Below are positions 803-60,008 of a stretch of 63,830 nt of DNA, piece by piece. A program made the translations under genes and the position numbers. Position 1 is the stretch's first letter. Each line of letters starts with the position of its first letter. Under the pieces are notes generated by a model that saw only the letters and a list, made by a program, of their open reading frames with translations, did no database searches and was not told the DNA's origin. The DNA is from Octopus bimaculoides (taxonomy: Eukaryota), in assembly GCF_001194135.2 (NCBI RefSeq), contig NC_068984.1, forward strand, positions 95,215,961 through 95,279,790, given 5' to 3'.

Positions 803-2263
803 TACAAATATATTAGAACGATCTTTGACCTCAGTCAATTTTAGCTTTTCTTGTCGTAAAAACAATACTTTTACTGTGTCACACTGTTTATGTATAATGA
901 ATACATTGTTTAGTTAATCTATATAATGTTTTCTTTAGTGTTTCTATATATTCATGTTTCAGTTTTCTGTTGTGAGGGCTAAACTTTGAACTATTCATTG
1001 TTTTATTTCTTCTTCACCTACTATTTAAATAATCTCAGTAGGAAATCTTATTGTGCAGTTATATTGAAATAATTCAAATCTTTGCCTTCAATCTATCTGC
1101 CAAAGACAGCAACAGAACTGTTAAACATTTTGAATTTGAATTTTATTTGGAAAAGCAAGAAATATTTATTCCTTGACACTTTTTGAGAACACCAAAAAAT
1201 ATTAATGCCCCAGAGACATCAGCCAAATATAGAGAGAATGGAATTCTTCTCTTATCTTCCTTGGATTGTCTGTAGTTATGTTCTCTATATCCAAACATCT
1301 GTTTCTATTTTGTATGAATGAGATTAGCATCTACCTTTACTACTTGAGATTTAGTCACACTATTTTGTTCCTGATGCCAAATCTGGTCTAACTGCTCAGG
1401 CAATGGGAGTTCTAATCACTGGCACTGACAGTGGAGAGCGAATCTGATTTTACAAGTTGGTTTTAAAGGAACCATGGAGATAATCCATCTCTAAGGAATT
1501 ATGAGAGATTTGCTCCTTGGTTTATGCTGTTTTATTTCCAATAAGTTCTCTGTGTAAAAGTATCACTTTTTGACTTATTTTTGTAAATATTATTTTGGAG
1601 TTTAATTTTACCATCTGAAAGTTTTATCAAGATTATGGAACCTATTGAAAATTTATTTCTTCCTCATAATGTGAGTAGGCATTACTTTTACACTCCATTC
1701 TTAACTTTTACACACACACATTATGCTAGAGACAGATTATTTTCAGATGTAGAGTATTTGGATGAATGAAGGTGTTGTTAGGGGGTACTATGTCTTCAGT
1801 GCCATGTGACTTGTGGTTGTCCTCATCTTCCTTTTATTGGTGTCCATCTCACTGTACCATTCCTACCACTACTCACATACCTACCAACTTTTGAATAATC
1901 AACTGGCAACAATAATAGTATCAGATTGATAGCAGTGTCTGTAGCTCTATATATGTTGTATGTCAACACAGCCTTGTGTGTGGAGATTTTATAGTTCAAG
2001 TCAGTGTTTCGGGGGTAAAGTGCCCATGAACTTGATGACCCTTCAATTAACTGTAACTGCATAGCGCTTCCTCCCACCTCGCTCCACCTTTTCATCATCT
2101 TGGGTGCATTCTTACATCCATACAATTTTTTTTTTCACAAGACAGTTCATTCTTGTTGCTATATTCTTTTACTTTGCATTTGTTGTGGATAATAGTTGAT
2201 TACTGTTGGATTTACCTGGAATTCAAGATATCTGGAAGGAGATCATCAAGTTGAACTGAAGGT

Positions 2264-10600: not shown

Positions 10601-12200
10601 CCAAATCAAGTGACCTGAGATCATTGAGCAAGTGACTTTGCTTCCAAGCTGATCCCAGGCCACACACATTCGCATACCCCATCTCAGTACAGTCATGTTA
10701 GTCGGAGAAAGAAAATGAGGAGGTTACTCACCTTGATTTTCAAGAAGCTTGGGAGTTCTGGGCCTCTCTACTGGCAAAAATTTTTAAAGGCACTTCCAAC
10801 ACCAACTGATTTTTTTAAAATACCAACACTACATGAGAATTTTTCTCTTATAATTTTATAAATGTCTGACATTTTAATTAAAGGTCTGTCTTTGGGTTTT
10901 GAGGATGAAATCCTTACATTTCTTTCCCTCTGTCTCTATTTTGTCTTTGTTTTGACTTAGAAAATCCATCAGTTCACTGTTGCACTTGTTCACAACAGTG
11001 AAATTGATGGATACATTTCATCTACAGTCTGATGAATATTCTTGTTTTTGAAGTTCTGTAATCGGTTTTTTCTGTGTTTTTCATACTGTTGTTGGTGATG
11101 TTGCTGTTTTTGAAGTTGTTTTTGTTCGAGTGAATTGTGTTGCAGTTGTGATTTCAGTATATCCTTTCGTTGAGTTCTTGGAGTAGGGCTATGTACTCTC
11201 CTCTTTTGCCTAACCCCTTTTTTCACTGTGATCCATTGATCGTTCAGCTCTTCTTTCTCTATGTCATTGCAGTTGATGTTGGTTTGGGAGGTAGAGCATT
11301 CAGGAGAAGCTTTCTTTTCCATGGCAACCAGGGGTAGACTCCTTTGTCTTGGTATGGATGTAGGAGTTGAGCACTTGTTCATGATTTTGCATTTGTGGTC
11401 TTTGTAGTGTTGGCAACAGTGGAAGTTTGGTTTTTCTTGTTTAAGTGAGTTACAGATCCATATGTGTGGCATCTTGGCTTTCTACTCCACTAACACTGAC
11501 AGATGAAGACCATCTGGTTGATATGGTCCTGCTTGTAGGGTCAGATTCATACCTATACCTGACCAATTTTGCTTAGGTATTTTCTTGACCGCAAATATTG
11601 TCACTTTGTCTTTCTGGCAGCACATTCAGTACCCTAATCTTGGCAAGGCATTGGCTGCAATGGCTGGGGATTAAGAAGTTGTTAATCCTCAGAGTGGTTG
11701 TGGAATTATACGTGGCTTCTTCTGTCCTAAATCTCACCTCAATATTTCCAAACTTCTTTTCTCAAGTGATGTGGATCTTTTGTTTCCACATGCGCCCAAA
11801 ACATTTTTGTATTTCACTGTCAGGAGCCTTTTCCACCTGGTGTGACTTAACTCTGATGCAACAGTATGTGACCATGCATCTTAAAATACTTTCTATCACA
11901 TCAGATGGAGAGTTTGCAGCTACCCTTCTCCCATTCCTTTTTACAATTTTCCTTGCCATTTTAAAATCTTCTTCATCTAGGTGGAGATCTTCCATATTTC
12001 TTGCTGCAAACACAAAAGAAGCGGAAGCAATATTCTTGTTTTTATGTTTTATTTCTTTCATGTTGGCAGTGGCATTGGCTTTGTAGATGTTGACACTAAG
12101 AGTGTTGATGTTGCTGAGAGACGCATTATTCGCCTCAAAGATGTCATTAAGTGTAGGCCATTCTATATCTTTGTTCTCAATTTTTTTTTATGAGGAATGC
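7627..12200 (-). mobile_element. L1/Tx1-like LINE, near full span but decayed, RT core deleted
   Basis: APE endonuclease ORF 10101-10682 (NVCGL, ISETR, VYAP, GDWN); RT start (FQPITLINTEFKILAK); RT end (LLGVWFG); ORF1-like basic and degenerate zinc-knuckle pieces at 11000-12060; AATAAA and (ATT)n at the 3' end near 7630-7650. Confidence 0.85.
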
Positions 12201-19354: not shown

Positions 19355-20112
19355 GTCTAGACCAGTAATTCCCAACCGATCTTTGGCCATGCCCTACTGA
19401 ATCATTTCTAAAATCCTGATGCGCCTTTGTGATATTTAATTTTTGTTATTCAAAATTTGGTTAATGTTTACAATATTACCCGGAAACAATAGCAAAAGAA
19501 AAAATAGTGCAATGGATGTAAAAAAAAATGTGTAGGAAGCGAATATGAAAAAAAAAATGTGCGGAAATCAACGGGGGTGGGGAGGACTTCAGAAAATTCA
19601 TAAGATCCCTCATAACTTTTAGGAAAATGTTTTTTTTTTAAATGAGATTTTACATAAAAACCTTTCAACCAGCATAGATTACGATTATAAACAAATTTGT
19701 GGGAAAATCTTTTCTGAGGGGTGGGGAGAGGACTTCAGAAAATTCACAAGATCCGAGTTTTNNNNNNNNNNNNNNNNNNNNNNNNNNNNNNNNNNNNNNN
19801 NNNNNNNNNNNNNNNNNNNNNNNNNNNNNNNNNNNNNNNNNNNNNNNNNNNNNNNNNNNNNNNNNNNNNNNNNNNNNNNNNNNNNNNNNNNNNNNNNNNN
19901 NNNNNNNNNNNNNNNNNNNNNNNNNNNNNNNNNNNNNNNNNNNNNNNNNNNNNNNNNNNNNNNNNNNNNNNNNNNNNNNNNNNNNNNNNNNNNNNNNNNN
20001 NNNNNNNNNNNNNNNNNNNNNNNNNNNNNNNNNNNNNNNNNNNNNNNNNNNNNNNNNNNNNNNNNNNNNNNNNNNNNNNNNNNNNNNNNNNNNNNNNNNN
20101 NNNNNNNNNNNN

Positions 20113-25281: not shown

Positions 25282-25421
25282 TCCTATGAAGATGATGCTG
25301 GTGGGGATTTTATGGTTGGCTCGTTCCAAGATTTTGGATATGGTACAGTTGATCAGGAGAATGAAGCTACAGCTTCAAGTTCAGATGAAAAACCACGGAT
25401 TCTGTTGATGGGCCTTCGAAG
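25282..25421 (+). CDS. RRAGC: RagC/D GTPase, first visible coding exon (SYEDDAGGDFMVGSFQDFGYG...SDEKPRILLMGLR)
   Basis: Preceded by polypyrimidine tract and CAG (ends 25281); ends AG|GTCAGT (phase 2). Encodes the DFGYG motif and KPRILLMGLR of RagC/D. Confidence 0.9.
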
Positions 25422-26998
25422 GTCAGTCTTATCATTCTTTAAAAGGTGTAATGAATAGATTGAACATGTGTTTTAGAAGTTGACCATATTAATGTTATGT
25501 TTTTTTTTTAATTATCTTGGGCAAGGGCATTCTGCAGCTTTGGGTCAAACAATGTTTTGTGTGTGGAATCTTGTTGAAAGAAACTGTTTAGAAGCCAGGT
25601 AAATACATGTATCAGAATTTGTTTACATATATAAAACACTGCATCAAAAGTTAAGTCATTTGGTAAATAGAGTTTGATAAAATATGTTCCACTCCAAAAT
25701 GAGTACTGAGTTCAGTATGATCAACTGAAAAGCCAGCATGAAAAGTGGACATAAAATGATGAACTTGATGCCTTATATTGATGATTCTTCAGTTTCTATA
25801 GTAATATAGACATTACCAAAGTTGCAATAAATATAATTTCTTATTGAACATTTTTGTGATAAATGCCTCATTTTTCACATTTAAGATGTGCCATGTAGAG
25901 CACATTTCTATCTCAATATAGTTATCTTCATCCCTTTGCTTTTTCATCTGAAGGCAGGGTGTGATAGAGTATTTGAGAATGTTATATAACAATGAACATT
26001 GGGTTTTAGGTACCTGAAGTTGATGTTTGATGTATAGTGGTGTAGTGAAGACTCTCTCTAGTAGCTGGAAATATTTTGTGGCAGGTAACACAGAACTTAA
26101 TCTAGTGTTCTATAATGTTTGTAAAATATAAGGAGTGAAAAAAGAGGAGCTTCAGTTAGAGTAGAAGAATAGCTAAGTATGGTTATTCTGAATCTGCTGC
26201 ATGACCTTGAGAAACTTACTGTATTCTAGGCTTTATATGCAAGTCAAAAGTTTGTGTGAATCTTGGTGACATCGTTGAAATGTATCCTTTGGATGTTAAA
26301 CCAGTGGAACTAAGGATGATCATGAGGAAGATGCCAGCAGCAGCAATGATGATGATAATTGATGCTATTGTTTTTCAGTTCCTGATGGACCCATATCAGG
26401 CAGACCTGATCAAAAGCATTCCAGTTATGGTTAACTCATCTGTGTTTTTCAGACAGAGTACATCTGGGACTACATTATCCAATGTGTCTATTCCTTTTTT
26501 CATGTGATGGGCTGTGATATGAGAGCAATTTGGCTACTATTTGTTGCAAGTCAAGTGACCACATAGAGACTTGCTCATAGCAGTTGTCAAATCACTCAGT
26601 ACTGTTAGTTTCTTGTTTGAATCTGCTGATAGGTAAAGAGGAGTCCTTTTGAGAGCAGCAATATTTTGGGTGCTCCTCAAACCATGGAACATTTGCAATG
26701 AACAGTAAATATACCCAGTATAGCTTTTCAGTGAAAACACACACATACAATCTACAAGTGTATACATGCATGCACAGGTTCCTACACATGCATCAATTAG
26801 CATGCACATCTGTACACATATATGCCTTGACACTATTGAAGAAAGAAGCACATCTCAATTGCAGATCGGAGGAGGGTGCATATCTGATATTGTGAAGGTA
26901 GTTTGGAGTTTCTAGCTGAAGGTGAACTCTTTATAACTCTATTGTATGTGGTAGGGTATGTTCCATTTGTAATTTACTACCTTTATCTTTCTTTTCAG

Positions 26999-27093
26999 AA
27001 GTGGCAAGTCCTCCATACAAAAAGTTGTGTTTCATAAAGTATCCCCAAATGAAACCCTGTTCCTTGAAAGCACTAACAAAATAGTCAAAGATG
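26999..27093 (+). CDS. RRAGC: RagC/D exon: P-loop and switch I ([32 protein letters not shown])
   Basis: ttttcAG acceptor, G|GTAAGT donor; 95 nt, phase 2 to phase 1; completes G1 motif GLRRSGKS. Confidence 0.96.
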
Positions 27094-28353
27094 GTAAGTC
27101 TGATAAGTTTATTAGTTTCAGTGAGGGCAGAGGAATAGTTTTGATTCTTTCATGTGATTTTATATTTCCATCTTATTGTATACATATATTTCTGAAATTG
27201 GCCATTTTGTTTGTAGTCATTAGTTCCATTTAGAGTATACATATCAACTCTAATGTGCTCCAAAGTTTGATTTTGTCCCCTAGACTTTTCACCCTGTATA
27301 TCAATTAACATCTTTCCATCAGTTCCAGCAACTCCCACTCCTAAACAGATGACACCACCCTTCATTCATCCCTAACCTTCTGTATCTGAGCATTATTCAC
27401 GTGCAAACTATAAGCCTCTGATGCTACATATGGTGGGCCTCACTATCACTGATGATCTCTGTGAAAGCCATGGGAACACTCTCTTCCTCTAGACTAGATC
27501 TATAAAGAAAAAAACTATATTGTATTTCTGGGGGAGGGGGATATTTCTGGAAGAAATATTCCAGTGTCAGGGTCACCAATTTTAGTGAGTTGGCTACCAA
27601 CTATATTGTTTTGCATTGAATACTATCATTTATGATATTGTCTAATATTCTCATGTTTTGTAATCTAGTTTTATTATATAGTTTTGTATTATAGTGCTTA
27701 GTCTTGAATATAATATTGCATGGTATAATATTGTAGACATCTACTGATGTTCATGTAAACCATTTCAATCTTCGCATGGTCAGGCCTTCAGTGACTAAAC
27801 TAGCAACCCTCAGAAAGCTTGCTTGGTAAGGAAGGTGATCATTGGAATGAAAAGCAAAATCTGTCAAGATGGACAGAATGATTCAATAGTTAACCTACTG
27901 ACTAAGTTTTCTATGGCATTCTCTTAGATGTGTGGTGACATGTCACACTGTGACTGTCTTCTGGCCAACCACCACAATAGTTGTAGGATCAGTATGTTTT
28001 GGCATGTTCTTGCTCACTATGTTTACATCATCTTATTGAAAAATTTTTACTAATAATTCCAAAAGCTATTAACACTTGCAAACATCCCTCTGAAATAATG
28101 TCAACTATTCAAAATGATATCTGATTGATTGCTCCCTGAGTTGCCAAGCATCTCTTTGCTCTGAGACGTAGCAAACAATTTAGTAGGATGCAAGAAAATG
28201 AGCCTTTATCTAGCCCAGTGGAATGATAGGAGACTACTAAATAGAAGAAATAAAGATCAACCAAAAATGCAATTGTGGCACTAGCTGGAAACACACAACA
28301 TTGATATAGTTGTCCTTTGTGATATGAGTACACATTCTCTTGGAATAAGAAAC

Positions 28354-28645
28354 TGTAGTGAGACATGAAAGCACTATTTTGTTGTGGTGGATTAGCTCAG
28401 TCATGCTATGCCCATTTCATCCATTTAGAGTTGGCTGCGGAAGGATACATGTGACAACTTCCGCCCAGCACTATATGTGCGTTTTTCAAAGAGCTAAATT
28501 AGTTGCTTCATAAACAAAACATGCCATCTGACATTTATTTCTACATACACTTTATTCCACATTATATTGTGACATTATCTTCCAACACATTACATTCAAA
28601 CATGTTACAACTTTGAACCCGTTACTTTAGTGACAACCTATAACA
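28354..28645 (+). repeat. 5' LTR of the Gypsy element (TG...CA, internally deleted)
   Basis: Begins TGTAGTGAGACATG, ends CTATAACA, followed by PBS-like TGGTAACC; lacks about 280 bp present in the 3' LTR. Confidence 0.8.
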
Positions 28646-31600
28646 TTGGTAACCAATCCATTAGATTAAAGATATACGTCTGATGTTGACTGATTTTCCC
28701 CCGCTCACTGCCATTTGTAAAAAAATTTTGATCCTGCTTCATTTTGGGTTTGTTTTACAGTCAATTGAGAGGAGAATAGAACAAATCACTGAGGATTAAT
28801 ATTTCTTTTCTTTGAGAACTGTGCTCACAACATTTTATTAATTCATACATACTACATTTCTTTGCCAGTATGAATCACTCTTTGTTACCAGCGTTCAATG
28901 GTTATGTAAGAGTTGGGTTTGCGCAAATAGTGTCATACTTTACTGCAAACGATATTAACTTGGGGCAGCAACAGCTGCATATTTTACTGAGTGCCATCCC
29001 TTCTTCATTAGCTGTTCATTTGAAGGATCTTATAACAGACCCACCTAAGGATGCATCTTATTTTTCAATAAAGAATAAAGTTCTCTGTAGAATGTCTCTT
29101 TCAGCAGAGAAACACTTTTGTAGTTGGTTAATGAGGAACACATGGATGACTGGATGCCAAGCCAACTCCTATGCAGGATGCAGGAAGTTACTGAGGGATC
29201 ATCTGAGGACAACTCCATGATTAAACAGTTTTTCTTCTCCTGTTTGCCATCAAATGTACAGGCCATCCTTGCTCCTACGATGGAGGTCAGTTCAGTAGAT
29301 CAGTTGGTTTCTTCAGCTGATAAAATATTAAAATATACTGGCAACAGAGATGCTGCTGTTTTTTCTTCTCCTTCTACAGTAGCAACTACTTCTCCTGAGG
29401 CTGATTCGATGCAATCAACGACTCTACAGACCATTCTTGATTTAACTAAAGAGGTGAAGAGATTATGTGCTGTGCAGAATTTTTCACACCGAAGATCATT
29501 CAGTTGTTCGTCCTCTCCTACATGGACACTGAGCATGACAGCTGCTCACAGTTTGTACCCTCGTACTCATGCATTTTTTGTTGAGGACTTATCGCACCAA
29601 CTTTTCCTTGTCAATCCTGGTGCTGGCTGCAGTATTTGGCCAGTAAAATTCATTAAAGATAAACCTCCTCTTGCAAGCAGTGAACCACTCACCTATTCTG
29701 ATGTACTGGCAAGTCTCTCTTTCTTCGGATTTGGCTCTGCGTTGTAATTTTAAATGGATTTTCATCATAGCTGACCAGCCTTACCCAACCCTTGGTGCGG
29801 ATTTTCTCCACCACTATTCTCTTATGTTCAGAAGCAGTGGCTTTTGGACAGCACTATAAACTTTTCTATTTTGGGGCAAAAATTGAGTATTTCATTGGTT
29901 ATCCTGACATTCTTTACTGCAGCGTCTGGAAACTTATATTGCTTTTAAGCTCTTACCCAGAGCTCACCAACCTGAGTTTCCAGGGGAATAATCCTACTCA
30001 CTCAATGAAATATTTCATTTCTAGGGATAGTGCTCTAGTGTTTTCATGTCCTTGTCATCTGCCTCTGGAGATGCTCAAAGCAGCAAAGGTAGAATTTGAT
30101 CACTTGCTGGAGCTCGAGATTATCCGCCCTTCCACAAGCCAATGGGCCTCACCCCTGCACATGGTCCCCAAGAGCTCTGATGATTGGAGACCTACAGTAA
30201 AAGTTAGACGTCTTAATGCTATCACCACTCTTGATAGGTTTCCAATTTCTCTTCTACAGGATTTTGCTTCCCCACTGCTTGGATGTACTGTGTTTTCCAA
30301 GCTCGATCTCATGAGGGCTTATCACCAAATACCTGTTCACCCTGAGGATGTTCTGAAGACTGCAGTTACAACCCCATTTAGCTCCTTTGAATTCTTGACT
30401 TTGCCATTTGGCCTTCACAATGCTGCCAGCACATTTCAGCAGTTCATAGATGTCATTTGTGGACTGGACTTTGTCTATGCATATATTGATGATCTCTTTA
30501 TTGCCAGTTCTTCAGCTGCAGAGCATGTTCATCATTTAAAGCTGCTCTTCCAGCATCTAAACCAATTTCAAGTTCAGATTAACCCTGTTAAATGTGTTTT
30601 TGACACATCCTCTCTTGTGTTTCTTTGCCGTATTATTGACAAAGAGGATATTCAACCTCTTCCAGAAAAGGTGTGGGCTATTAAGGACCTTCCTCCTTCT
30701 CCTTCCCTTTGCCTGCCTTGGATTGCTAAGTCTTTATAGACGTTTCATTTCTTGCTGTGCTGGGCCTCTGTCTCCTCTTATTGAGCTCTTAAAGTATTGT
30801 CATAAGAAGAATGAAGTTATTGTATTGACTCTGGCCCAGATGGAAGCTTTTGATATTGTTAAACATGAACTTGTTAAAGCATCTTTCCTCGTACATCCTG
30901 TCTTCAATGCAAAGCTTTCGCTTGTGGTTGATGCATCGAACACAGCTGTTGGCGCCATTTTACAACAGTTTCATGAAGGACACCTGCAACCTCTTGCCTT
31001 TTTCTCTCAGCAGCTGAAACCTGCCAAGACTTGTTACAGCCTCTTTGGTCGCAAATTGTTAGTGATCTACCTTTCGGTAAAGCATTTCCAGCATACCCTT
31101 GAAGGGAGGAACTTTATCATCTATACTGATCATAAGCCTCTTACTTTTGCCTTATGATCCAAGCCTGAGAAGTATTCACCGAGGTAGACTAGACACCTGG
31201 ATTTCATATCTCAATTTACCAGTGACATCCAGCACATCTCTGGAGCTCAGAACACTGCTGCAGATGCATTTTCCCACCTTCCAGTGAATTCTTTGTTATC
31301 TACTTCTGAAATAGACCTGACTGTTTTATCCTCTGGACTCACTTGACACATCTTCTCCTGAATTTGTAACATGCAAATTCAAATACCTGCCTCTACCAAC
31401 TGTTGACATGCAGATCTTGTGTGATGTGTCAATGGATTCGCGTAATCCTTTCATCCCAGGAACCCATTGTTGAGCTGTATTGGAAGCTTTGCACAGTCTT
31501 TCTCACCCTGGAGTTTTGGCCTCAGTAAAGCTTATCATAATGGCTAAATTCTTCTGGCCAAATATGAGACACGACATTACTGAATGGATCCGATCTTGCC

Positions 31601-32699
31601 TTCAATGCCAGAAGTCGAAGGTGCATAAGCACATCTGTGCCCCTTTTGGCACTTTTAGTACTCTTGATGTGCGTTTCTGCCACATTCATATTACCTGAAG
31701 CCATTCTGCTAAGTGATATTTCTGCTGAACCTATAGTGCAAGCCCTGGTATCAGGATGGATATCATGTTACAGTGTTCCTGCCCTCGTTACTACAGACTA
31801 TGGTAGACACTTTGAATTTCACCTTTTTTTTTTGGAGCTCACAAAAATCATCGGTGCTCAATGGACTCGAACTACCAGTTATCATCCTGCATCTAATGTA
31901 ATGGTGGAGCACTTCCATCACCAGTTGAAAGTCGCATTTTGTGCCTATCCTGATACTCAGTGCTGGAACGGAACGAGTACCTCCTCAAAGTACTCCTTGG
32001 CATCCAGACTTCATTTAAGGAGGACCTTGGATTCTCCCCAGTTGAGATTTTGTAAGGTGCTCTTTGTCTTTGCCTGGGCAGATACTTGCCCCAGTCAATC
32101 TTTCTACTCAGGATCCTGCACTCTATGTGAACTGCCTACATGCGAACTTTCAAGTCCTGCACCAAGCCATTAAACTTTCAGTCCTGAGGGACATTGCCTT
32201 GTGGATCCATGTTTTCATTAGAAATGATGCAAAAGTCCTCTCACTCCACCTTACTCTAGACCTTATTGCATGCTGGCATGCTCAGACAAACATTTTACTA
32301 TTGACTATAATGGGTCTAGAGACACAGTTCCCATAGATAGACTAAAAAAAGGCCTTCACAGATGCTCATACCCTGGAGCCCCCCCCCCTCACACTGTTAC
32401 ACACACACACACACACACACACCTCCCCTACCTTCACTAACATGCATCACAACAGCCCACAGTGGTCGTCATGTTCATTGACCCAAGGAACTGTGTAAAA
32501 CTATTTTCATATGAATTGACCTTTAATGCCTATTATTGTCTTGCATTTTTTCTTAATATATTCATAATGTTTTCTTTTTTCCAGTATTTGAACGTTTGTT
32601 AACTTTTCATGTATACAATGTATTTTTTCTTTTGCCTTTGCTTTGCATTTTTCATTCTTCCTGCTTGTTTGTAACGACTTTCAGTCTGCAGTGGGGTAG

Positions 32700-33272
32700 T
32701 GTAGTGAGACATGAAAGCACTATTTTGTCATAGTGGCATAGCTCAGTTGTGCTATGCCCATTTCATCCAATTAGAGCTGGCTGTGGAAGAACATATGTGG
32801 CTACTTCTGCCCAGCAGTGTACACGTTTTTCAAAGAGCTAAATCAGTTGCGGATTTGATGGCCCTAGTGGCAACATTACTCTTTCTGCTATGTATGTTTT
32901 ACATTGTTCACTATCAACACTGCACAACTCATTTTGACTTATATCTATAATCATTCTGAAGCATATAAGCTACCAAGGTTAAATACTTAGTAAGTCATGC
33001 AAAATTCATTCATGTCTCGCTACGTCTCTCTCATTCTTCCAATGCTCTACAATTTTTAGCATTCACACACAAAGATAAAAATTAATTCTTTACTTAGCAT
33101 TTATCAACAATCCTAAATAAATTACTATGCTTCATAAACAAAGCATGCCTTCTGACATTTATTTCTACATACACTTCATTCCACATTATACTGTGACATT
33201 GTTATATTCCAACACATTACATTCAAACATGTTACAACTTTGAACCCGTTACTTTAGTGACAACCTATAACA
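32700..33272 (+). repeat. 3' LTR of the Gypsy element
   Basis: Immediately follows the PPT; begins TGTAGTGAGACATG, ends CTATAACA. Confidence 0.85.
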
Positions 33273-33629
33273 TTGGTAACCAATCCATTAGATTAAAGAT
33301 ATACGTCTGATGTTGACTTTGCCATTATGGACAGTATTGCGGTTAAATCAGACCAGAAACCAGTTGCTCTTAGTGACCAGATGATAAGTTTGGGAATTCC
33401 CATTAGAAGGGATTCTATGCCACTTAGCTCAACATTTTTGCAAAATTATTGATCGTTAAACTGAGCAAGAAAATTGCTATAGTCCTACTTCAAATTCAGT
33501 GTGTGTTTAGAAGAAGTACAATGAACTAGATTATCTGTCTATATCAGATCCAATAGAAATATGCGGAATAGAAAAAATGATCAACAATTTTGCAAAAATT
33601 TTCCAGAATTTGTTTTCTACAATTTGGAA

Positions 33630-34810
33630 AATTATAGCAAGTAATGAAATCCTTCAATAGTTCCTGCAGTCATTCTTGTTGTGCTTCTTAAATATGGGGA
33701 TGATGCTAGCATCCTTCCAGTCATATGGGGCATCACCAACATCATCTGGTGGAGACATCTAATGGTATAGTGTCCACCATTTCCCATACTTCTGCTGGGA
33801 CTAACGACTCTGATTTTAATTGACTTCATGAAGGTATTCAGCACAGTAAACCAATTGAGCATGTGGAAGGTAGAAAATTCACTTGTCTGATTGAGTTCCT
33901 GACAGCTTGAGTTATGCAGTTGAACACCAGCTCTGCACAATTTAATCTTATAGTGGAATTCAAGCAGAACTGACTCTGTGCTATGCTAACATTATTCTCA
34001 CTTTGTCTGACAGCAGCACTCAAGGAGGTATTCTATAACTCCATTGAAGTTATATGCATATAGCCAAGATTTCGAAGCTAAGATTTACATAAATCTTAAA
34101 GTGAGAAATGTTGTTTGCTGATGATTGAGCCCTGGTTTCTTATCATGCAGAGGACATGCAGAGACTGGTGGATGCTTTTGGCAGTGCAACCACAAAACTT
34201 GGCTGGAAAATTAACATCTTGTAGACGGAAATTCTCTGTCAGCTAAACAAAGTTGCATAAACCAAGCTTATCAACATTGAATAAAAGTTGACAAAGCCAA
34301 GTCACTTTACCTATCTGGACATTGCAATCAGTTGTGATGATAAAATCAGTAAGGAACTAGATTGCAGGATGAATAGAGCCAAGTTGGCATTTGGAAGATT
34401 GAGAGTGCCACTGTGAAACAACTGGCATGCAGTTGTCTGAGTGAAGGGCTAAGCAATTGTATTATCTACTCTAGATTGGAATCATGGATGTTACACTTCA
34501 AACAGGTAAATAAAACTGTATGTATTCAAAATGAGACATCTGAGGTAAATCATGAATATTACTCAAGACAGGTCAGAGACACTTTTATTCTAGGGCTTTC
34601 CCTAATATGAAAGAGATATTGGTACAGTGAACCCTCAGGTAGCTCTGCATGTCCAAACAATGAAGAAAACTCAGTTTTCAAGACAAATGCTATATTCATA
34701 ACTGGCTAGTTGTACAAGAAATCAGAGTAGACCACATTTGAAATACAAGGATATGGTTAAAGACAACTTGAGGGGATTGAATATTGACATATACAGCTGG
34801 ATCACAAGAA
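33630..34810. mobile_element. Old RTE (BovB-like) fragment with inverted 5' segment
   Basis: Minus 33630-34030: WKDASIIPIFKK...DCRNY.RISLL. Plus 34080-34810: LFADD.AL...MQRLVDAF...KLAFGRL...KYKDMVKDNL. Confidence 0.7.
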
Positions 34811-35282
34811 TCTAGTATAGAGGCCTACAGAGTTTGAGATTATGTCTATGGATAGTTATCATTGGTATCAATGGACAGTCTGTGATTGATGAAATAGAAT
34901 CTATTGTAATATTGTATGCTATTGTGTAGTATTGTACATAGTACAGTATTGTATAGCTTAATTGTTTAATTTGTAATAGACTAATGACTGAGTGGAAGAG
35001 ATCTTATCAAGTAGCCTGTCTTATGTTCACCAGCAATATCCAATTTGCAACTTGCATCAGTATGTGCTGGTATGACCATGTAGTGTCTGTCTTCCCCGAG
35101 CATAACTCATTAATTTTCAACTCCTGGTAATATATTATATTATGTTTATTTCTATCAACTGAAATAGTTAACACAATATGACATACTACCAACAGTTTTA
35201 TGCTAATTGAGATAATTGAGATCATGATGATGATTATTGTCACTGTTGTCATTCTTTTCCAATCTATATTACTCTCACACAG

Positions 35283-35416
35283 ATATTTCTAACAGTTCAT
35301 TTGTCCAATTCCAAGTATGGGATTTGCCTGGTCACATAGATTTCTTTGATACTCTATTTGATGTCGACAAAATATTTCGTGGTTGTGGTGCCTTGATTTT
35401 TGTCATTGATGCACAA
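35283..35416 (+). CDS. RRAGC: RagC/D exon: switch II ([45 protein letters not shown])
   Basis: cacacAG acceptor, CAA|GTGAGT donor; 134 nt, phase 1 to phase 0. Confidence 0.96.
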
Positions 35417-38039: not shown

Positions 38040-41000
38040 AGAAATTCTTATCCTCTGTCATCCTTGGTTGTCTCCTACGTACACTTCTAAGGGCCTAATG
38101 CCATCCCCTCCCCTACCCAGGGTTTTATCGATCTTATAGTGCATAAAGATGGTGTAGTGTATGCAGGTTGTAGGCATTGTTTGTTTATGAATTCTGCCAA
38201 ATGCAAGCTTTCTTTTCATGTACAGGGCACTGCTTTCCCTCATCCCAGGGTCGCACATGCCCACACCCTTAGAATTGGCACACTCAACGTCGGCATACTG
38301 ATAGGTAGGTCTGGTGAGAAGTAAGGTGGAGAGGAGGTTCCGCTAGGTTCCTCACAGGCAAAGAACTCAGGTACAAGATTTCCTGGGCAGGGAACACTGA
38401 TGGGGTTGGGGGTGTGGGAATACTTCTTGCAGAGAAATGGGTTAAGGTAATCGAGGTAGTCAGAGTATGTGACAGAGTACTTAAGATTAGACTAGTGCTT
38501 CACCATAGGTCATCTCGGCCTATGCCCCTCAACCGGGGCTACCGGATGGGAAGAAAGACCAATTCTATGACACCCTGTTGCAAACTACCTCATTGATGAA
38601 TGACAGGGACCTTCTCTTCGTGGCTGGTGATTTAAATGGACATGTTGGACAACATGCAGGGGGCTTCCTTGGCGTACATGGAGGCTTCGGTTCCCGCAAT
38701 GAGGAGGGAACCAGACTGCTGGAGTTCTGCAATGCAAATGATCTTATGGTTTGCAATACCAACTTCAGGAAACCTGCCTGTCACCTACCGTTCCGGCAGA
38801 CACACTAGCCAAATCAACTACATCCTTGCTAGAAATAGGGAAAGAGGACTGCTTATAAATGCCAAAACCTTCCAAGGTGAAGAATGTACCCCTCAACACA
38901 GATTAGTAGTTAGCGACTTCGGGATCAAGGCTAAATGGATGCCCAGAAGTAGACCAGCTTGGAGGAGAAGGGTCTGGAAGCTTAAAGATCCTGCAAATGG
39001 ACAGAGATTTAGAAATGTCTTACTTGAAGCATTTGACGAAATAAAAGGGGATATAGCATCACACAATGTGGAAGACAATTGGAGGTTTCTACAGGACAAC
39101 CTGCTGAGAGCCTCCAACCAGATCTGTGGCTGGTGCAAAGTCCCCTCTCGACCCAAAATAACATGGTGGTGGAACAATGTGGTTGACAGGGCTATTAGAC
39201 AAAAGAAACAGGCTTGGAAGGACTGGAAGAACAGAGGTAGCAGGGAATTGTATCAGATTGCCAGAAGGGAAGCTAGGAGACAGGTTTACTTAGTCAGAGG
39301 GGAAGCAGATAAGAAAAAGTTTGCTAATGTTCTGCACCGTGAGGACCAAAGACTTGAAGTATTTCGTGTTGCAAGACAGTGTGTGAGAGAGAATCATGAT
39401 GTCGTAGGAGAGAAATGTGTCCGCATGGATGATGGCTCACTTACACGAAATGAGGCTACAAAGAGAGAGGTTTGGAGACGTCACTATGAAAGGCTGCTTA
39501 ATAAAGAGAATGAATGGGAGGAAGAGAGTCTGCCGCATGCCAACCCAACAGAGGGACCAGCTATCCTAATTGACAGTACCTTGGTAGATAAAGCGACCAA
39601 GAGTATGAAGACAAGGAAAGCCCTCGGCCCATCAGGAATCACTGCAGAGATGCTCAAAATATCTGGCAGTGTCGGCTATAGCCTAGTCACCCGTATAGTT
39701 AATCAGGTGATACACGAAGGAGTCATATCCAATGACTGGTGTAGCAGCACCTTAATCAACTGCTACAAAGGTAAAGGTGACGCTTTAGACACAAACAATT
39801 ACAGAAGTATCAAGTTGTTGGACCAGGTAATGAAGGTCACCGAGAGGGTTATAGCCCAACTAATTAGGGAGAGAGTCAGTTTAGATGAGATGTAGTTTGG
39901 GTCCGTTCCAGGAAAAAGCACCACTGATGCTATATTTCTGGTAAGACAGCTTCAGGAGAAATACCTAGCCAAAGATAAATCTCTGTACCTAGCTTTCGTC
40001 GACATGGAGAAAGCCTTTGACAGGGTCCCCGATCCCTTATCTGGTGGTCAATGAGGAAACTAGGGGTAGATGAGTGGTTAGTGAGAGCTGTGCAAGCCAT
40101 GTACAGGGACGCTGTCAGTAAGTTGAGGGTTGACAATGAGTACAGTGAAGAAATCCGAGTAGGGGTCCACCAAGGTTCAATCCTCAGCTCCCTCCTATTT
40201 ATCATAGTCCTCCAGGCAATAACACAAGGAATTCAAGACAGGAGCACCTCTATGCTGATGACCTTGCGCTAATTACTGAGTCACTATCAGAACTAGAGGA
40301 GAAGTTTCAGGTGTGGAAGCAAGGACTGGAATCGAAGGGCCTTAGAGTCAACCTACCTAAAACCAAAGTCTTAATAAGTAGGAAGGTAGACAAACTACAA
40401 ACCCCTTCAGGTAGATGGCTCTGCTCGATCTGTTGAAAAGACGTAGGTAGAAACTCCGTAAGATGTACCCAGTGTAAGCTATGGACACATAAGAGGTGCA
40501 GCAATATCAAAGAATGGCTAACCAGCAAGATAGTTTTTGTATGTTGCAGATGCTCAGGAGCAATAAACACTGAAAATGTGGAGAAAACCTTTTCCACACT
40601 TCAGGGAGAAAAACTAGAAGTAGTTGATAGCTTCTGCTACCTAGGTGACCAAGTTAGTAGCGGGGGAGGGTGCGCTGAAAGTGTAGCTGCTAGAATAAGA
40701 ATAGCCTGGGCAAAGTTTAGAGAGCTCTTACCTCTGCTGGTGACAAAGAGCCTCTCACTCAGAGTAAAAAGCAGACTGTATGACGCATGTGTATGAACAG
40801 CCATGCTACATGGCAGTGAAACATGGGCCGTGACTGCAGAGGACATGCGTAAGCTTGCAAGAAACNNNNNNNNNNNNNNNNNNNNNNNNNNNNNNNNNNN
40901 NNNNNNNNNNNNNNNNNNNNNNNNNNNNNNNNNNNNNNNNNNNNNNNNNNNNNNNNNNNNNNNNNNNNNNNNNNNNNNNNNNNNNNNNNNNNNNNNNNNN

Positions 41001-41384
41001 NNNNNNNNNNNNNNNNNNNNNNNNNNNNNNNNNNNNNNNNNNNNNNNNNNNNNNNNNNNNNNNNNNNNNNNNNNNNNNNNNNNNNNNNNNNNNNNNNNNN
41101 NNNNNNNNNNNNNNNNNNNNNNNNNNNNNNNNNNNNNNNNNNNNNNNNNNNNNNNNNNNNNNNNNNNNNNNNNNNNNNNNNNNNNNNNNNNNNNNNNNNN
41201 NNNNNNNNNNNNNNNNNNNNNNNNNNNNNNNNNNNNNNNNNNNNNNNNNNNNNNNNNNNNNNNNNNNNNNNNNNNNNNNNNNNNNNNNNNNNNNNNNNNN
41301 NNNNNNNNNNNNNNNNNNNNNNNNNNNNNNNNNNNNNNNNNNNNNNNNNNNNNNNNNNNNNNNNNNNNNNNNNNNNNNNNNNNN
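38040..41384 (+). mobile_element. RTE family A, near full length (APE plus RT), disabled by stops and frameshifts; 3' end in an N gap
   Basis: LRIGTLNVG, GDLNGHVG, EECTPQHRLVV, NYRSIKLL, DMEKAFD, VHQGSILS, FCYLGD, LHGSETW. Confidence 0.93.
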
Positions 41385-43890
41385 TTACTTCATTGGAGTT
41401 TACTCTGCTTGTGAAGACCTGTTGAGGCAAGTGAATATCCCCCTGTTTCACTCCATTTTGTATTAAGATGGGCTCTGACATTTTACCTCTAACATTAACC
41501 CTACCCTTCATGTCTTCATAAAAAGACCTAAACAAAGCAAGAAACTTTTTGGGACAACCAAGTTTCTGGAGGACTTTCCACAGTGCATTTCTATTAACTG
41601 TATCAAAGGCTTTTGTCAGATCGACAAAATCCTGATATAAATTCAGACCCTGTTCCACAAACTTCTCCTGAAGCTGTCTAGCTGAGAAGATCACACCACC
41701 AGTGCTGCATTCCACACAAAAGCCAGATTGACTTTCTGGAAGAACACAATCTGCAATGGGTTCAGCAGACAATCAAGAAGTACCCTGCATAAAACCTTTC
41801 TTACGACAGAAAGCAATGATATTCCCCTATAGTTACCACAATCATTCCTGTTGCCCTTTCTCTTATATAAGACCACCATTACTGTATCTCTCCAGTTCTC
41901 AGGTACAGATTCAGTAGCCCACATCCTGCCAAACAAAGAGTGAAGTTGCTGTAGAAGTTTCTCACTGCCATACTGTAACAACTCCGCATGTATACCATCC
42001 ATATCTGGAAACCTCCCATTATTCATCCTTGAGACAGCCACTGCAACTTCTTCCAACATTGGTGGGTCCATGAGAGCCACCCTCATAGGTAACTCAGGGA
42101 TGAGATTGAGAACATCCTCACTAACTGCAGACTGCTGATTCAAAAGTTCATTAAAGTGTACTCGCTACCTTCGCAGAATTCTTTACCATCCCTGCTTCGA
42201 AGTGGTGTCATCAGAGAAGAAGTCGGTCCATACAACAAGAGACCATATAACAGCTTTGTGTTATTGGAATCCGACGCCGCCTGTATCTCATCAGCCTTCT
42301 TACTCCACCAGGTATCCCTCATTTGAGAGAGCCTCCACCTCACACGTGACTTCACATCCTTGAGTTCCCTATGCAACACATCTCTCTCCTGTGGCTTTGC
42401 TGACAAATAGCGTGACAAAGTATGTCTTTTATCAGCCAATAAATCATCTATATGTTCATCATTTTCTTTAAACTAATCTTGATATTTTCTTTGTATCAAT
42501 CCCAGAACTTTCCTGCCTATAAACTGACTTTTTAAGGGTCTGCCAATCCTACCCAATATCAGCAACATTCATTTCCTCTCGTAAAGTTCTCTTCACACTG
42601 TTACAACTAACATTGTCTTTTAGGCAGGGTAATACCTGCAACCCAGATTTTACATTTTGTGATTAATTTCACTTTTGCACATACTAGGCAGTGGTCAGTC
42701 CAACACACAGCACATTTCGTCTGTCACACACCCTAACAGGATGTAATCCAGAATATGCCATTCTTTAGATGCAGGGTGCATCCATGTAGTCTTAAACTTA
42801 TCCTTTTGTTGAAACATGGTATTGGTAGCACACAGATGCAACTCCTCGCACATCTGCAGCAGAAGCATAACATTACTATTACACTTTCCCACCCCATGCT
42901 TTTCAATTACAGTCCATGTGTTAAAATCCCTACCCACTCTAGCATTAAAGTCACTCAGTATGATGACTTTGTCTGCCCTAGGGATGTTTCTCATAATGCC
43001 CTTCATAGCATAGTAGAAAGAAACTTTTTCGTCTTCAGTAGAGCACATAGTTGGAGCATACACACTCACCAAGATCACATAATTTCCTTTAGCCAAAGGA
43101 ATTCTCATGGACATAAGACGCTCATTAATCCCGACTGGGAATTCTTCCAACCTGTCCACAAGAGTAGTCTTAACAGCAAATGCCACTCTAGCCTCTCCTC
43201 AAAACTCTTCATCTCTCCCTTTCCAAAAGAATGTATATTTTCCACAAGATTCTGTAAGATGATCATCTCCAGCTAATCTCATCCCAGATAAAGTAACGAT
43301 GTCAAGATCATAGCGTTGAAGCTCCTTTGCAACAAGAGCAGTCCTTCATTCAGGATATTCTGAGGATTCACTGTCAAGTGGTGTCTGTACATTCCAACAG
43401 CCAATATTCAATATTTTATTTAGTTCTATCACAGTAGCACGATGACGGCTGGGTTCAGACTGTGATGTTCTGGAGCCCCTTCCGGGCCAGACTCTTTCAT
43501 CTGATGTGGTTGCAGAGTCCTTACTGCCATTTATTTTTATACTGTTTTGGTACATCATTGATTGTTTGCTTTTTAAGGTTACAGCCAGCCATTCAGTTGA
43601 GACTCAACAATCATCAATTAGTTAATTAATCAATCAATCAATGTTGTTATCATGCAGTGCCTGTGCAAGAAGATTTTTTAAAGTAAGAAAAGGCTGTGCA
43701 CTGAGTCAATCCCACTCACTAAGCAACAGTAACTATAACCCGAAAAGAAGAACAAGTCAACATCATCAGTAACCACTGAGCCGCAGGTTTTATGTCGGAG
43801 TTATCCCAGTTACCTGAGTTGCCTTCTCCTATAAAGATGCCCTAACAAGGGCTAGGAGTCCTTCACTCCCAATGGTTTAACCGTGTGATC
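41385..43890 (-). mobile_element. RTE family B (BovB-like), 5' part (5' UTR, APE, RT start)
   Basis: LNIGCWNVQT, VSVYAPT, DFNARVG, HILDYIL, NYRGISLLS, DLTKAFDTV, GVKQGD; 5' UTR motif ggagaaggcaactc. Confidence 0.9.
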
Positions 43891-46683: not shown

Positions 46684-46883
46684 GATGAATATGTGGAGGC
46701 GCTAGACAAACTAAATATGACAGTGACCCGGGCACATAAAATTAACCCTGAAATCAAGTTTGAGGTATTCATTCATAAAGTGGATAGCTTGTCTGATGAT
46801 CAAAAGATAGAATCTCAGCGAGATATTCACCAGAGGGCTAATGATGATCTTGTTGATGCTGGATTTGAAGGGATCTACCTGAG
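46684..46883 (+). CDS. RRAGC: RagC/D exon: G4 ([10 protein letters not shown]...[41 protein letters not shown])
   Basis: ttcctAG acceptor, AG|GTGAGA donor; 200 nt, phase 0 to phase 2. Confidence 0.96.
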
Positions 46884-47357: not shown

Positions 47358-47472
47358 TTTCTATCTGACCAGTATCTATGACCACTCTATATTTGAAGCA
47401 TTCAGCAAAGTGGTCCAGAAACTGATACCTCAGCTACCTACATTGGAAAACCTTCTGAACATGCTCATCTCT
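47358..47472 (+). CDS. RRAGC: RagC/D exon: G5 ([39 protein letters not shown])
   Basis: catgcAG acceptor, TCT|GTAAGT donor; 115 nt, phase 2 to phase 0. Too short for the ORF track; translated by hand. Confidence 0.96.
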
Positions 47473-52463: not shown

Positions 52464-52606
52464 AATTCTGGTATTGAAAAAGCCTTCTTGTTTGATGTTG
52501 TCAGCAAAATTTACATTGCCACTGACAGCTCACCTGTTGACATGCAGTCCTATGAATTGTGTTGTGATATGATAGATGTGGTCTTAGATATCTCCTGTAT
52601 CTATGG
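52464..52606 (+). CDS. RRAGC: RagC/D exon: C-terminal roadblock domain ([48 protein letters not shown])
   Basis: ttttcAG acceptor, GG|GTAAGT donor; 143 nt, phase 0 to phase 2; translated by hand. Confidence 0.96.
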
Positions 52607-54147: not shown

Positions 54148-54296
54148 GTTACAGGATGATAATGAACTGAATGCATTTGATGATGAGTCTGCATCAATCA
54201 TCAAACTAAACAACACAACAGTCTTATACCTTCGGGAAGTCAATAGATATTTGGCTCTTGTTTGCATTTTACGTGAGGATAACTTCATTAAACAAG
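54148..54296 (+). CDS. RRAGC: RagC/D exon: roadblock domain (LQDDNELNAFDDESASIIKLNNTTVLYLREVNRYLALVCILREDNFIKQ)
   Basis: tatgtAG acceptor, G|GTAAGA donor; 149 nt, phase 2 to phase 1. Confidence 0.95.
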
Positions 54297-56222: not shown

Positions 56223-56365
56223 GTATAATTAACTACAACTTTCTCTGCTTCCGCAAAGCTATCCAAGAAGTGTTTGAAGTGCGGCAAAAGATGTTGGCCT
56301 CCAAGACTGAGAATGGTACTGACCATCAGGTGCTCAATGGCATTGCTGTTAACAAAGATGAATGA
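56223..56365 (+). CDS. RRAGC: RagC/D last coding exon ([47 protein letters not shown])
   Basis: ttgaacAG acceptor; phase 1; YNFxCFRKAIxEVF motif; TGA at 56363-56365. Confidence 0.94.
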
Positions 56366-59845: not shown

Positions 59846-60008
59846 NNNNNNNNNNNNNNNNNNNNNNNNNNNNNNNNNNNNNNNNNNNNNNNNNNNNNNN
59901 NNNNNNNNNNNNNNNNNNNNNNNNNNNNNNNNNNNNNNNNNNNNNNNNNNNNNNNNNNNNNNNNNNNNNNNNNNNNNNNNNNNNNNNNNNNNNNNNNNNN
60001 NNNNNNNN

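What the first reader, a model, noticed from the sequence alone, without database searches (positions are those of the whole stretch)
35318..35335. RagC switch-II glutamine replaced by histidine (WDLPGH instead of WDFPGQ)
Seen: exon 35283-35416 encodes W-D-L-P-G-H, with CAC at 35333-35335, in an intact ORF with canonical splice sites. Established: this position is Gln in RagC/D (human Q120, where Q120L is the standard GTP-locked mutant) and in yeast Gtr2. Q-to-H at the equivalent Ras position (Q61H) impairs hydrolysis, whereas DxPGH is the normal catalytic motif of translational GTPases such as EF-Tu. RagC must be GDP-bound, via the FLCN-FNIP GAP, to activate mTORC1. Inference: this may be a natural RagC variant with altered nucleotide cycling, and so a rewired amino-acid sensing input. 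A-to-I editing cannot restore Gln; CAC would become CGC (Arg).
Basis: partly seen in the sequence, partly recalled or inferred. Interest (0 to 1): 0.75.

Follow-up and report, generated by a model that had tools for sequence, protein, structure and literature searches.

The report
Octopus RagC with switch-II histidine
The octopus nutrient-sensing GTPase RagC really carries histidine where humans and yeast have the "catalytic" glutamine, but the change is ancient, shared by most shelled molluscs and found again in flatworms and a chytrid fungus, so it is probably a tolerated swap, not an octopus-specific rewiring.

Summary
Window 35318-35335 reads TGG GAT TTG CCT GGT CAC (WDLPGH) in exon 35283-35416 of an intact RagC/D gene, 100% identical to Octopus RagC. 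The His aligns without gaps to human RagC Q120.

It is not an assembly error. A spliced transcript from a sister Octopus species has CAC. Decapodiform transcripts have CAT, with three further synonymous changes in the six motif codons. dN/dS against the decapodiform is 0.02.

It is not octopus-specific. WDLPGH occurs in every cephalopod sequence seen, in the named bivalves (Solemya, Mercenaria, Ruditapes, Potamilus) and in Patella, Haliotis and Gigantopelta. A chiton and other phyla keep WDFPGQ. Caenogastropods and Biomphalaria have WD[I/V]PGQ and nest inside the His-bearing clade. This fits one gain in the conchiferan stem and one reversal.

His also occurs in Fasciola, Macrostomum and Batrachochytrium. 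Among 118 divergent RagC/Gtr2 cluster representatives, only 59 have Gln (D 18, H 12, G 8, and others).

The most likely mechanism is inferred, not tested: His takes over the water-positioning role, as in Sar1 (His79 with the Sec23/24 GAP), so FLCN-FNIP-driven hydrolysis is kept. A rewired nucleotide cycle is not excluded. Interest is modest.

The parts
1635..1670 (+). Alternative first coding exon (MEPIENLFLPHN, as in O. sinensis isoform X2), followed by a GTGAGT donor
   Evidence: Exact six-frame match to the N-terminus of P0237.
12090..12152 (+). Possible alternative first coding exon related to isoform X1 (MLTLRVLMLLRDALFASKMSLS); weak evidence
   Evidence: tblastn hit at 71% identity to the N-terminus of P0003. 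Not verified by any transcript.
25282..25421 (+). First shared coding exon (SYEDDAGG...LMGLRR); carries the start of the P-loop
   Evidence: tblastn against human RagC; AG/GT boundaries; junctions match transcript L001.
26999..27093 (+). Coding exon with the P-loop GKS and switch I ([31 protein letters not shown])
35283..35416 (+). Coding exon with beta-3 and switch II ([45 protein letters not shown])
   Evidence: The same exon end (VIDAQ|GT) is seen in other WDLPGH-bearing genomic fragments.
35318..35335 (+). G3/switch-II motif WDLPGH; Leu at 35324-35326 replaces the usual Phe and His at 35333-35335 (CAC) replaces the usual Gln
   Evidence: Aligns to human W115-Q120.
46684..46883 (+). Coding exon with the Rag-type guanine-binding motif HKVD
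47358..47472 (+). Coding exon ([11 protein letters not shown]...); end of the G domain and the linker
52464..52606 (+). Coding exon; start of the C-terminal roadblock domain
54148..54296 (+). Coding exon; roadblock domain
56223..56365 (+). Last coding exon, ending in stop TGA; the 3'UTR runs to at least 56495
   Evidence: The L001 alignment reaches 56495.

Best explanation
This is the functional RagC/D orthologue of an Octopus (vulgaris/sinensis group); no second copy surfaced. Its switch-II motif changed from WDFPGQ to WDLPGH in the stem of the conchiferan molluscs. It has been kept since under strong purifying selection. The likely mechanism is inferred: the His imidazole takes over the job of the Gln carboxamide, orienting the attacking water, while the GAP (FLCN-FNIP, Arg164 finger in humans) supplies the main catalytic power. 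This would parallel Sar1, where His79 works in Sec23/24-stimulated hydrolysis. On this reading RagC still cycles between GTP and GDP and still feeds amino-acid status to mTORC1 and TFEB, possibly with shifted kinetics. Shown here: the sequence, its expression, its homology, its phylogenetic distribution and the selection on it. Inferred: hydrolysis competence and the role of the His.
For: Identity and integrity: Gtr1_RagA scores 273 bits. The alignment to human RagC is ungapped with E=1.7e-167. All splice sites are canonical and confirmed by a transcript. The P-loop GLRRSGKS, HKVD and TSI motifs are intact (read from the sequence). Selection: 18 synonymous and 0 non-synonymous differences from a sister Octopus. 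Omega is 0.02 against a decapodiform, with dS saturated. The His codon alternates between CAC and CAT among lineages. Age: WDLPGH occurs in Octopus, Argonauta, Acanthosepion, Solemya, Mercenaria, Ruditapes, Potamilus, Haliotis, Patella and Gigantopelta. A chiton, a brachiopod, annelids and nemerteans have WDFPGQ. With the two motif columns masked, an NJ tree nests the Gln-bearing Apogastropoda inside the His-bearing gastropods. Exchangeability: His arose independently in Fasciola, Macrostomum and Batrachochytrium and reverted to Gln in Apogastropoda. Precedent: Sar1 His79 corresponds to Ras Gln61 and Arf1 Gln71, and H79G lowers Sec23/24-stimulated hydrolysis (PMC2150902). FLCN acts through the Arg164 finger (PMC9473554). 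The DLPGH motif raises the similarity to GTP_EFTU and SRPRB profiles.
Against: No biochemistry exists for any His-type RagC. In Ras, Q61H impairs intrinsic and GAP-stimulated hydrolysis (established knowledge), so His is not generally equivalent to Gln in an Arg-finger GAP setting. Divergent RagC/Gtr2 representatives also carry G, A, P or V at this position, residues that cannot orient a water molecule. That suggests the position may simply matter little, rather than that His is catalytic. Conservation of FLCN, FNIP and the Arg finger in molluscs could not be checked here.
Confidence: 0.6

Rival explanations
1. The position is largely dispensable in the RagC/Gtr2 subfamily, as Gln64 is in Rheb and as in Rap, which lacks the Gln. 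The GAP and the cis P-loop arginine would do the chemistry, and His would be an effectively neutral substitution frozen by history.
For: Only 59 of 118 divergent RagC/Gtr2 cluster representatives have Gln. The rest have D 18, H 12, G 8, S 5, N 5, A 3 and others. Named examples are Amoeba proteus (D), Porphyridium (S) and Nowakowskiella (N). Q<->H is a single third-position change, and it has gone both ways within molluscs. The review PMC5618229 lists a P-loop Arg (Gtr2 R18 / RagC R70) as a possible transition-state stabiliser, and that Arg is kept here.
Against: Each large clade keeps its own residue. All 21 full-length WDLPGH proteins have His and all 121 other sequences in that set, mostly animal, have Gln, despite synonymous turnover of the codon. 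A neutral site should drift. Gtr2 Q66L and RagC Q120L have clear phenotypes, although Leu may be actively disruptive. The representatives over-sample fast-evolving lineages and partial gene models.
Confidence: 0.22
2. As with Ras Q61H, the His slows hydrolysis, so mollusc RagC is biased toward GTP or uses a different off-switch, and the amino-acid input to mTORC1/TFEB is rewired.
For: Q61H impairs hydrolysis in Ras (established knowledge). The change comes with F->L at position -3 and with loss of the hydrophobic residue at the human M132 position in all His-bearing molluscs, which could reflect a re-tuned switch II. Apogastropoda reverted to Gln, which could mean the two states are not equivalent.
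Against: GTP-locked RagC/Gtr2 inhibits TORC1 and growth (PMC5618229). A constitutively biased sole RagC would be costly, yet the gene has omega 0.02. His has been retained across three mollusc classes and arose again in flatworms and a chytrid. Sar1 shows that His at this position supports GAP-stimulated hydrolysis. Outside molluscs His pairs with F, V or I at -3, so no special co-adaptation is required.
Confidence: 0.13
3. Artefact: an assembly or sequencing error, a pseudogene, or a codon corrected at the RNA level.
For: The window contains several N gaps, so the assembly is imperfect.
Against: An independent transcript has CAC. Other cephalopods have CAT. Many species share His. The ORF is intact with canonical splice sites and 0 non-synonymous differences from a sister species. 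Editing cannot produce a Gln codon from CAC.
Confidence: 0.01

Closest known systems
Human RagC/RagD (RRAGC/RRAGD) and yeast Gtr2
   Same: Same family and architecture: a Gtr1_RagA G domain plus a C-terminal roadblock domain. The alignment to human RagC 56-370 is ungapped. The P-loop GLRRSGKS, switch-I Thr, Rag-type HKVD and TSI motifs are identical.
   Different: Switch II reads WDLPGH instead of WDFPGQ. His replaces Q120 (Gtr2 Q66), Leu replaces F117, and Lys replaces the human Met132.
Sar1 (with the Sec23/24 GAP)
   Same: An Arf-like small GTPase whose switch-II catalytic position is His (His79, equivalent to Ras Q61 and Arf1 Q71). H79G lowers Sec23/24 GAP-stimulated hydrolysis (PMC2150902). 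From memory, its motif is DLGGH and the Sec23 finger is Arg722. It is a working model for how a His-type RagC could still be switched off by the FLCN Arg164 finger.
   Different: It is not homologous at family level. Sar1 has no roadblock domain and no heterodimer, and it acts in the COPII coat. The resemblance is one residue and its role.
Translational GTPases (EF-Tu, EF-G, LepA) and SRP receptor beta
   Same: They share a DxPGH switch-II motif. The native octopus protein gets a GTP_EFTU hit of 25.0 bits that vanishes in the L->F/H->Q revertant, and its SRPRB score rises slightly. There are weak PDB hits to EF4 and EF2 over the same stretch.
   Different: The scores are at or below the Pfam cut-offs and cover only part of each profile. 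In translational GTPases the His is activated by the ribosomal sarcin-ricin loop (established knowledge), not by an Arg-finger GAP. This is convergence of a motif, not membership.
Ras Q61H
   Same: The same Gln->His change at the structurally equivalent residue.
   Different: In Ras it is a somatic, hydrolysis-impairing oncogenic mutation. Here it is a germline state fixed across whole classes of animals under purifying selection.

Membership tests
RagC/D-Gtr2 subfamily of Rag GTPases | Gtr1/RagA-type G domain (Pfam PF04670) | tested here: met
   273.1 bits against a cut-off of 22, covering profile positions 1-232 of 232.
RagC/D-Gtr2 subfamily of Rag GTPases | Closer to RagC/D/Gtr2 than to RagA/B/Gtr1 | tested here: met
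   Human RagC E=1.7e-167 and Gtr2 about 1e-89 to 1e-124, against RagA/Gtr1 at about 1e-15.
RagC/D-Gtr2 subfamily of Rag GTPases | Rag-specific guanine-binding motifs: His in place of Asn (HKxD) and Ile in place of Ala (TSI), as described in PMC5618229 | tested here: met
   FIHKVD and LTSIYD are present in the translated exons.
RagC/D-Gtr2 subfamily of Rag GTPases | C-terminal roadblock (dimerisation) domain | tested here: met
   The query aligns across human RagC C-terminal-domain chains 6ehr_G and 5x6v_G (query 215-346, E about 1e-66).
RagC/D-Gtr2 subfamily of Rag GTPases | Switch-II DxxGQ with the 'catalytic' Gln (Q120 / Gtr2 Q66) | tested here: not met
   His at this position. Gln is present in only 59 of 118 divergent family representatives, so it is a common feature of the family rather than a defining one.
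RagC/D-Gtr2 subfamily of Rag GTPases | Heterodimer with RagA/B and GAP regulation by FLCN-FNIP | not testable with these tools
   This needs the octopus RagA, FLCN and FNIP sequences plus biochemistry.
His-type GTPases (translation-factor GTP_EFTU family; SRP receptor beta) | Full-length match to the family profile above Pfam's cut-off | tested here: not met
   GTP_EFTU scores 25.0 bits, below the cut-off of 26.5, and covers profile positions 70-187 only. SRPRB scores 26.6 against a cut-off of 25, but over profile positions 2-82 of 178, and the Gln revertant still scores 25.4. The octopus protein resembles these families in the motif only.

The most novel reading that the evidence does not exclude
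The His gives mollusc RagC (and, independently, flatworm and chytrid RagC) a hydrolysis step with different control from the Gln form. For example, the step could be titratable near physiological pH at the lysosomal surface, or it could depend differently on FLCN-FNIP. The TFEB/mTORC1 nutrient switch would then be tuned differently in these animals, and Apogastropoda would have reverted for a functional reason.
Probability: 0.12. Interest if true: 0.6.

Novelty: new variant of a known kind. Interest (0 to 1): 0.3.

Why it matters
RagC Q120L and Gtr2 Q66L are standard tools built on the assumption that this Gln is the catalytic residue. This work shows that nature has replaced it with His for the whole history of cephalopods, bivalves and basal gastropods. 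It has also been replaced with His, Asp, Asn, Ser or Gly in other eukaryotes. That gives GTPase biochemists a ready-made set of natural variants for testing what the residue contributes to FLCN-FNIP-stimulated hydrolysis. It also warns against reading a Ras-Q61H-like defect into the sequence alone. For octopus biology specifically, nothing unusual is implied.

Tried and rejected
1. A mutually exclusive Gln-type copy of exon 3 in the long flanking introns. A six-frame motif scan and tblastn found only one such exon, so this was rejected.

2. A second protein search with a 48-aa exon profile. It returned only short gene fragments, apparently because candidates are limited by length. It did add seven WDLPGH exon fragments and showed WDLPGQ in fragments that lack the conchiferan Val and the mollusc exon boundary.

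3. ENA and Logan sample accessions do not reveal taxa. The origin of P0025, which has L+H but does not cluster with molluscs, therefore stays unknown.

4. An obligatory Leu(-3)/His coupling. It is perfect among the 142 full-length proteins, which are mostly animal. It fails in the wider family, where His also pairs with F, V and I, so it was rejected as a biophysical requirement.

5. Literature searches for any report of a mollusc or other His-type RagC found nothing in the held library.

6. Rfam and tRNA scans of the window found nothing.

7. The first coding exon 'MSAIKVK', conserved among cephalopods, was not found in the window. It may lie in a gap or upstream.

Full report
**Observation**

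The stretch 35318-35335 reads TGG GAT TTG CCT GGT CAC, which is W-D-L-P-G-H, with CAC at 35333-35335. It lies in exon 35283-35416, which encodes [45 protein letters not shown] and is flanked by AG and GT.

tblastn with a human RagC sequence written from memory located eight coding exons on the + strand, from 25282 to 56365, all with canonical splice sites. The joined ORF is 100% identical to RagC of Octopus sinensis, O. vulgaris and O. bimaculoides. The annotated isoforms differ only in their first exon, and one of those first exons is at 1635-1670.

A phmmer search of PDB sequences aligned the protein without gaps to human RagC residues 56-370 (E=1.7e-167). This puts the His exactly at Q120. 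The P-loop (GLRRSGKS), the Rag-type HKVD motif and the TSI motif are intact.

**Not an artefact**

L001 is a 1322-nt spliced contig from run SRR3401912, from a sister Octopus species (96-97% nucleotide identity). It reproduces every exon junction and has CAC at the His codon. It shows 18 synonymous and 0 non-synonymous differences from the window over 372 codons.

Six transcript contigs of a decapodiform have TGG GAT CTT CCA GGC CAT. Their protein cluster includes Acanthosepion pharaonis. His is therefore kept while four of the six motif codons changed synonymously. Across 359 codons dN/dS is 0.02, with dS saturated.

No cluster member has Arg at the site, so there is no sign of dominant A-to-I recoding. 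Low-level editing cannot be judged from assemblies.

**Distribution**

Among the 120 best full-length homologues:
- 103 have WDFPGQ.
- 8 have WD[I/V]PGQ.
- 9 have WDLPGH.

A profile search added more sequences. The named sequences fall into three groups:
- WDLPGH: the cephalopods Octopus, Argonauta and Acanthosepion; the bivalves Solemya, Mercenaria, Ruditapes and Potamilus; and the gastropods Patella, Haliotis and Gigantopelta.
- WDFPGQ: the chiton Liolophura, Lingula, annelids, nemerteans, arthropods, deuterostomes, cnidarians and sponges.
- WD[I/V]PGQ: the caenogastropods Pomacea, Littorina, Batillaria and Babylonia, and the heterobranch Biomphalaria.

The apogastropods share conchiferan-specific residues with the His-bearers, for example Val in HKVSPNE. 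An NJ tree built with the two motif columns masked places them inside the gastropods, next to Patella, Haliotis and Gigantopelta. The simplest history is one F->L plus Q->H change in the conchiferan stem, followed by one reversal in the Apogastropoda stem. The Cambrian age of that stem comes from established mollusc phylogeny, not from a test done here.

No species showed both a His-type and a Gln-type protein in these searches. That argues against an ancient paralogue pair, but whole genomes could not be scanned.

**Wider family**

A full HMMER scan of 1.84 billion 50%-identity cluster representatives returned 150 RagC/Gtr2-type proteins (E<=5e-61). Of the 118 sequences in that alignment (the window protein included) with an unambiguous xxxPGx at the aligned columns:
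- 59 have Gln.
- 18 have Asp.
- 12 have His, counting the window protein.
- 8 have Gly, 5 Ser, 5 Asn and 3 Ala; the rest have other residues.

Named examples:
- His: Fasciola hepatica and F. gigantica (WDFPGH), Macrostomum lignano (WDVPGH) and Batrachochytrium dendrobatidis Gtr2 (WDFPGH).
- Asp: Amoeba proteus.
- Ser: Porphyridium.
- Asn: the chytrid Nowakowskiella.

Cluster representatives over-sample fast-evolving lineages and include partial gene models, so these are counts of clusters and not of species. They still show that Gln at this site is not a universal feature of the RagC/Gtr2 side of the dimer, and that Gln->His has happened several times.

Among the 142 full-length sequences from the first and third searches, Leu at -3 goes with His without exception. 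In the wider set, His also pairs with F, V or I. The coupling is therefore historical and not obligatory.

**Mechanism**

No tool here measures hydrolysis, so this part is inference.

Points from the literature:
- Gtr2 Q66 / RagC Q120 is predicted to stabilise the transition state, and Gtr2 Q66L inhibits TORC1 (review PMC5618229).
- FLCN acts on RagC through the Arg164 finger (PMC9473554).
- Intrinsic Rag hydrolysis is barely detectable in vitro (PMC3908400).
- Sar1 has His79 at the position of Ras Q61 and Arf1 Q71, and H79G lowers Sec23/24-stimulated hydrolysis (PMC2150902).
- From general knowledge, translational GTPases use the His of DxPGH.

Consistent with that last point, the native octopus protein gets a weak GTP_EFTU hit (25.0 bits). 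An in-silico L->F/H->Q revertant loses that hit and gains 4 bits on the Gtr1_RagA profile.

Putting together the strong purifying selection, the retention across three mollusc classes, the repeated independent origin and the reversal, my best reading is a functionally conservative swap of the water-positioning residue, with GAP-driven cycling preserved (about 0.6). The rivals are:
- The residue is largely dispensable in this subfamily (about 0.22).
- It is an artefact (about 0.01).

**Comparison and novelty**

The gene is an ordinary, already annotated RagC orthologue. What is not ordinary is the catalytic-site residue. I found no paper in the held library that mentions a His-type RagC. I therefore class it as a new variant of a known kind. 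Interest is modest, because it is widespread, recurrent and probably tolerated. Its main value is as a natural test set for the role of Q120.

**Limits**

All three word-indexed protein searches went on the distribution of the His. Octopus RagA, FLCN and FNIP were therefore not examined. Many His-bearing sequences are unnamed transcript assemblies. The NJ tree is a simple distance tree on a slowly evolving protein.

Noticed in passing
Related proteins P0247-P0395 (not in the window): Across divergent RagC/Gtr2 cluster representatives the switch-II 'catalytic' position is Gln in only 59 of 118. Asp (18), His (12), Gly (8), Ser, Asn and Ala are common. Many Asp-type proteins carry long low-complexity insertions right after the motif.
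   Followed up: partly
P0025 / L011 (Logan SRR21130500); fragments P0121 and P0124: This is a WDLPGH-bearing RagC that has Met rather than the conchiferan Val in HKMSPNE. It does not group with molluscs in the NJ tree. It may be an unsampled mollusc class or another independent origin of His.
   Followed up: partly
window 17979-18977 (-) and 38636-39895 (+): Two copies of the same non-LTR retrotransposon family, with near-identical reverse-transcriptase N-terminal peptides, lie in opposite orientation. They sit in the introns flanking exons 25282-35416. Such inverted copies can pair in pre-mRNA, but no effect was tested.
   Followed up: no
window 29792-31157 (+); also 29124-29747 and 31637-32173: A degraded LTR-retrotransposon pol region (Pfam RVT_1, RT_RNaseH_2), split over overlapping frames, lies inside the 8-kb intron before the switch-II exon.
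   Followed up: partly
window 10101-10682 (-); 40759-42143 (-); 42695-43186 (-): Further non-LTR retrotransposon remnants. The first ORF has a weak Exo_endo_phos endonuclease hit. The other ORFs look reverse-transcriptase or endonuclease-like by eye.
   Followed up: partly
window 16745-17202, 18031-18469, 19762-20112, 40866-41384, 59846-60008 (plus 10-N runs at 17498 and 49455): These are assembly gaps (runs of N), all intronic or outside the coding exons. A CA/TG microsatellite borders the gap at about 20.1 kb.
   Followed up: no
window 1635-1670 and 12090-12152; upstream of 25282: The gene has several alternative first exons (RefSeq isoforms X1-X4). The 'MSAIKVK' first coding exon, conserved in Octopus, Argonauta and cuttlefish transcripts, was not found in the window, so the gene may start upstream or in a gap. 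The read-through start MPFFLQ at 25264 matches a UniProt O. bimaculoides model.
   Followed up: partly
window 35369-35371 (Lys; human Met132 position): Besides Leu at -3, this is the only other column that nearly separates His-bearers (H, N, K or A) from Gln-bearers (M, T, V or L). It lies in the switch-II helix.
   Followed up: no
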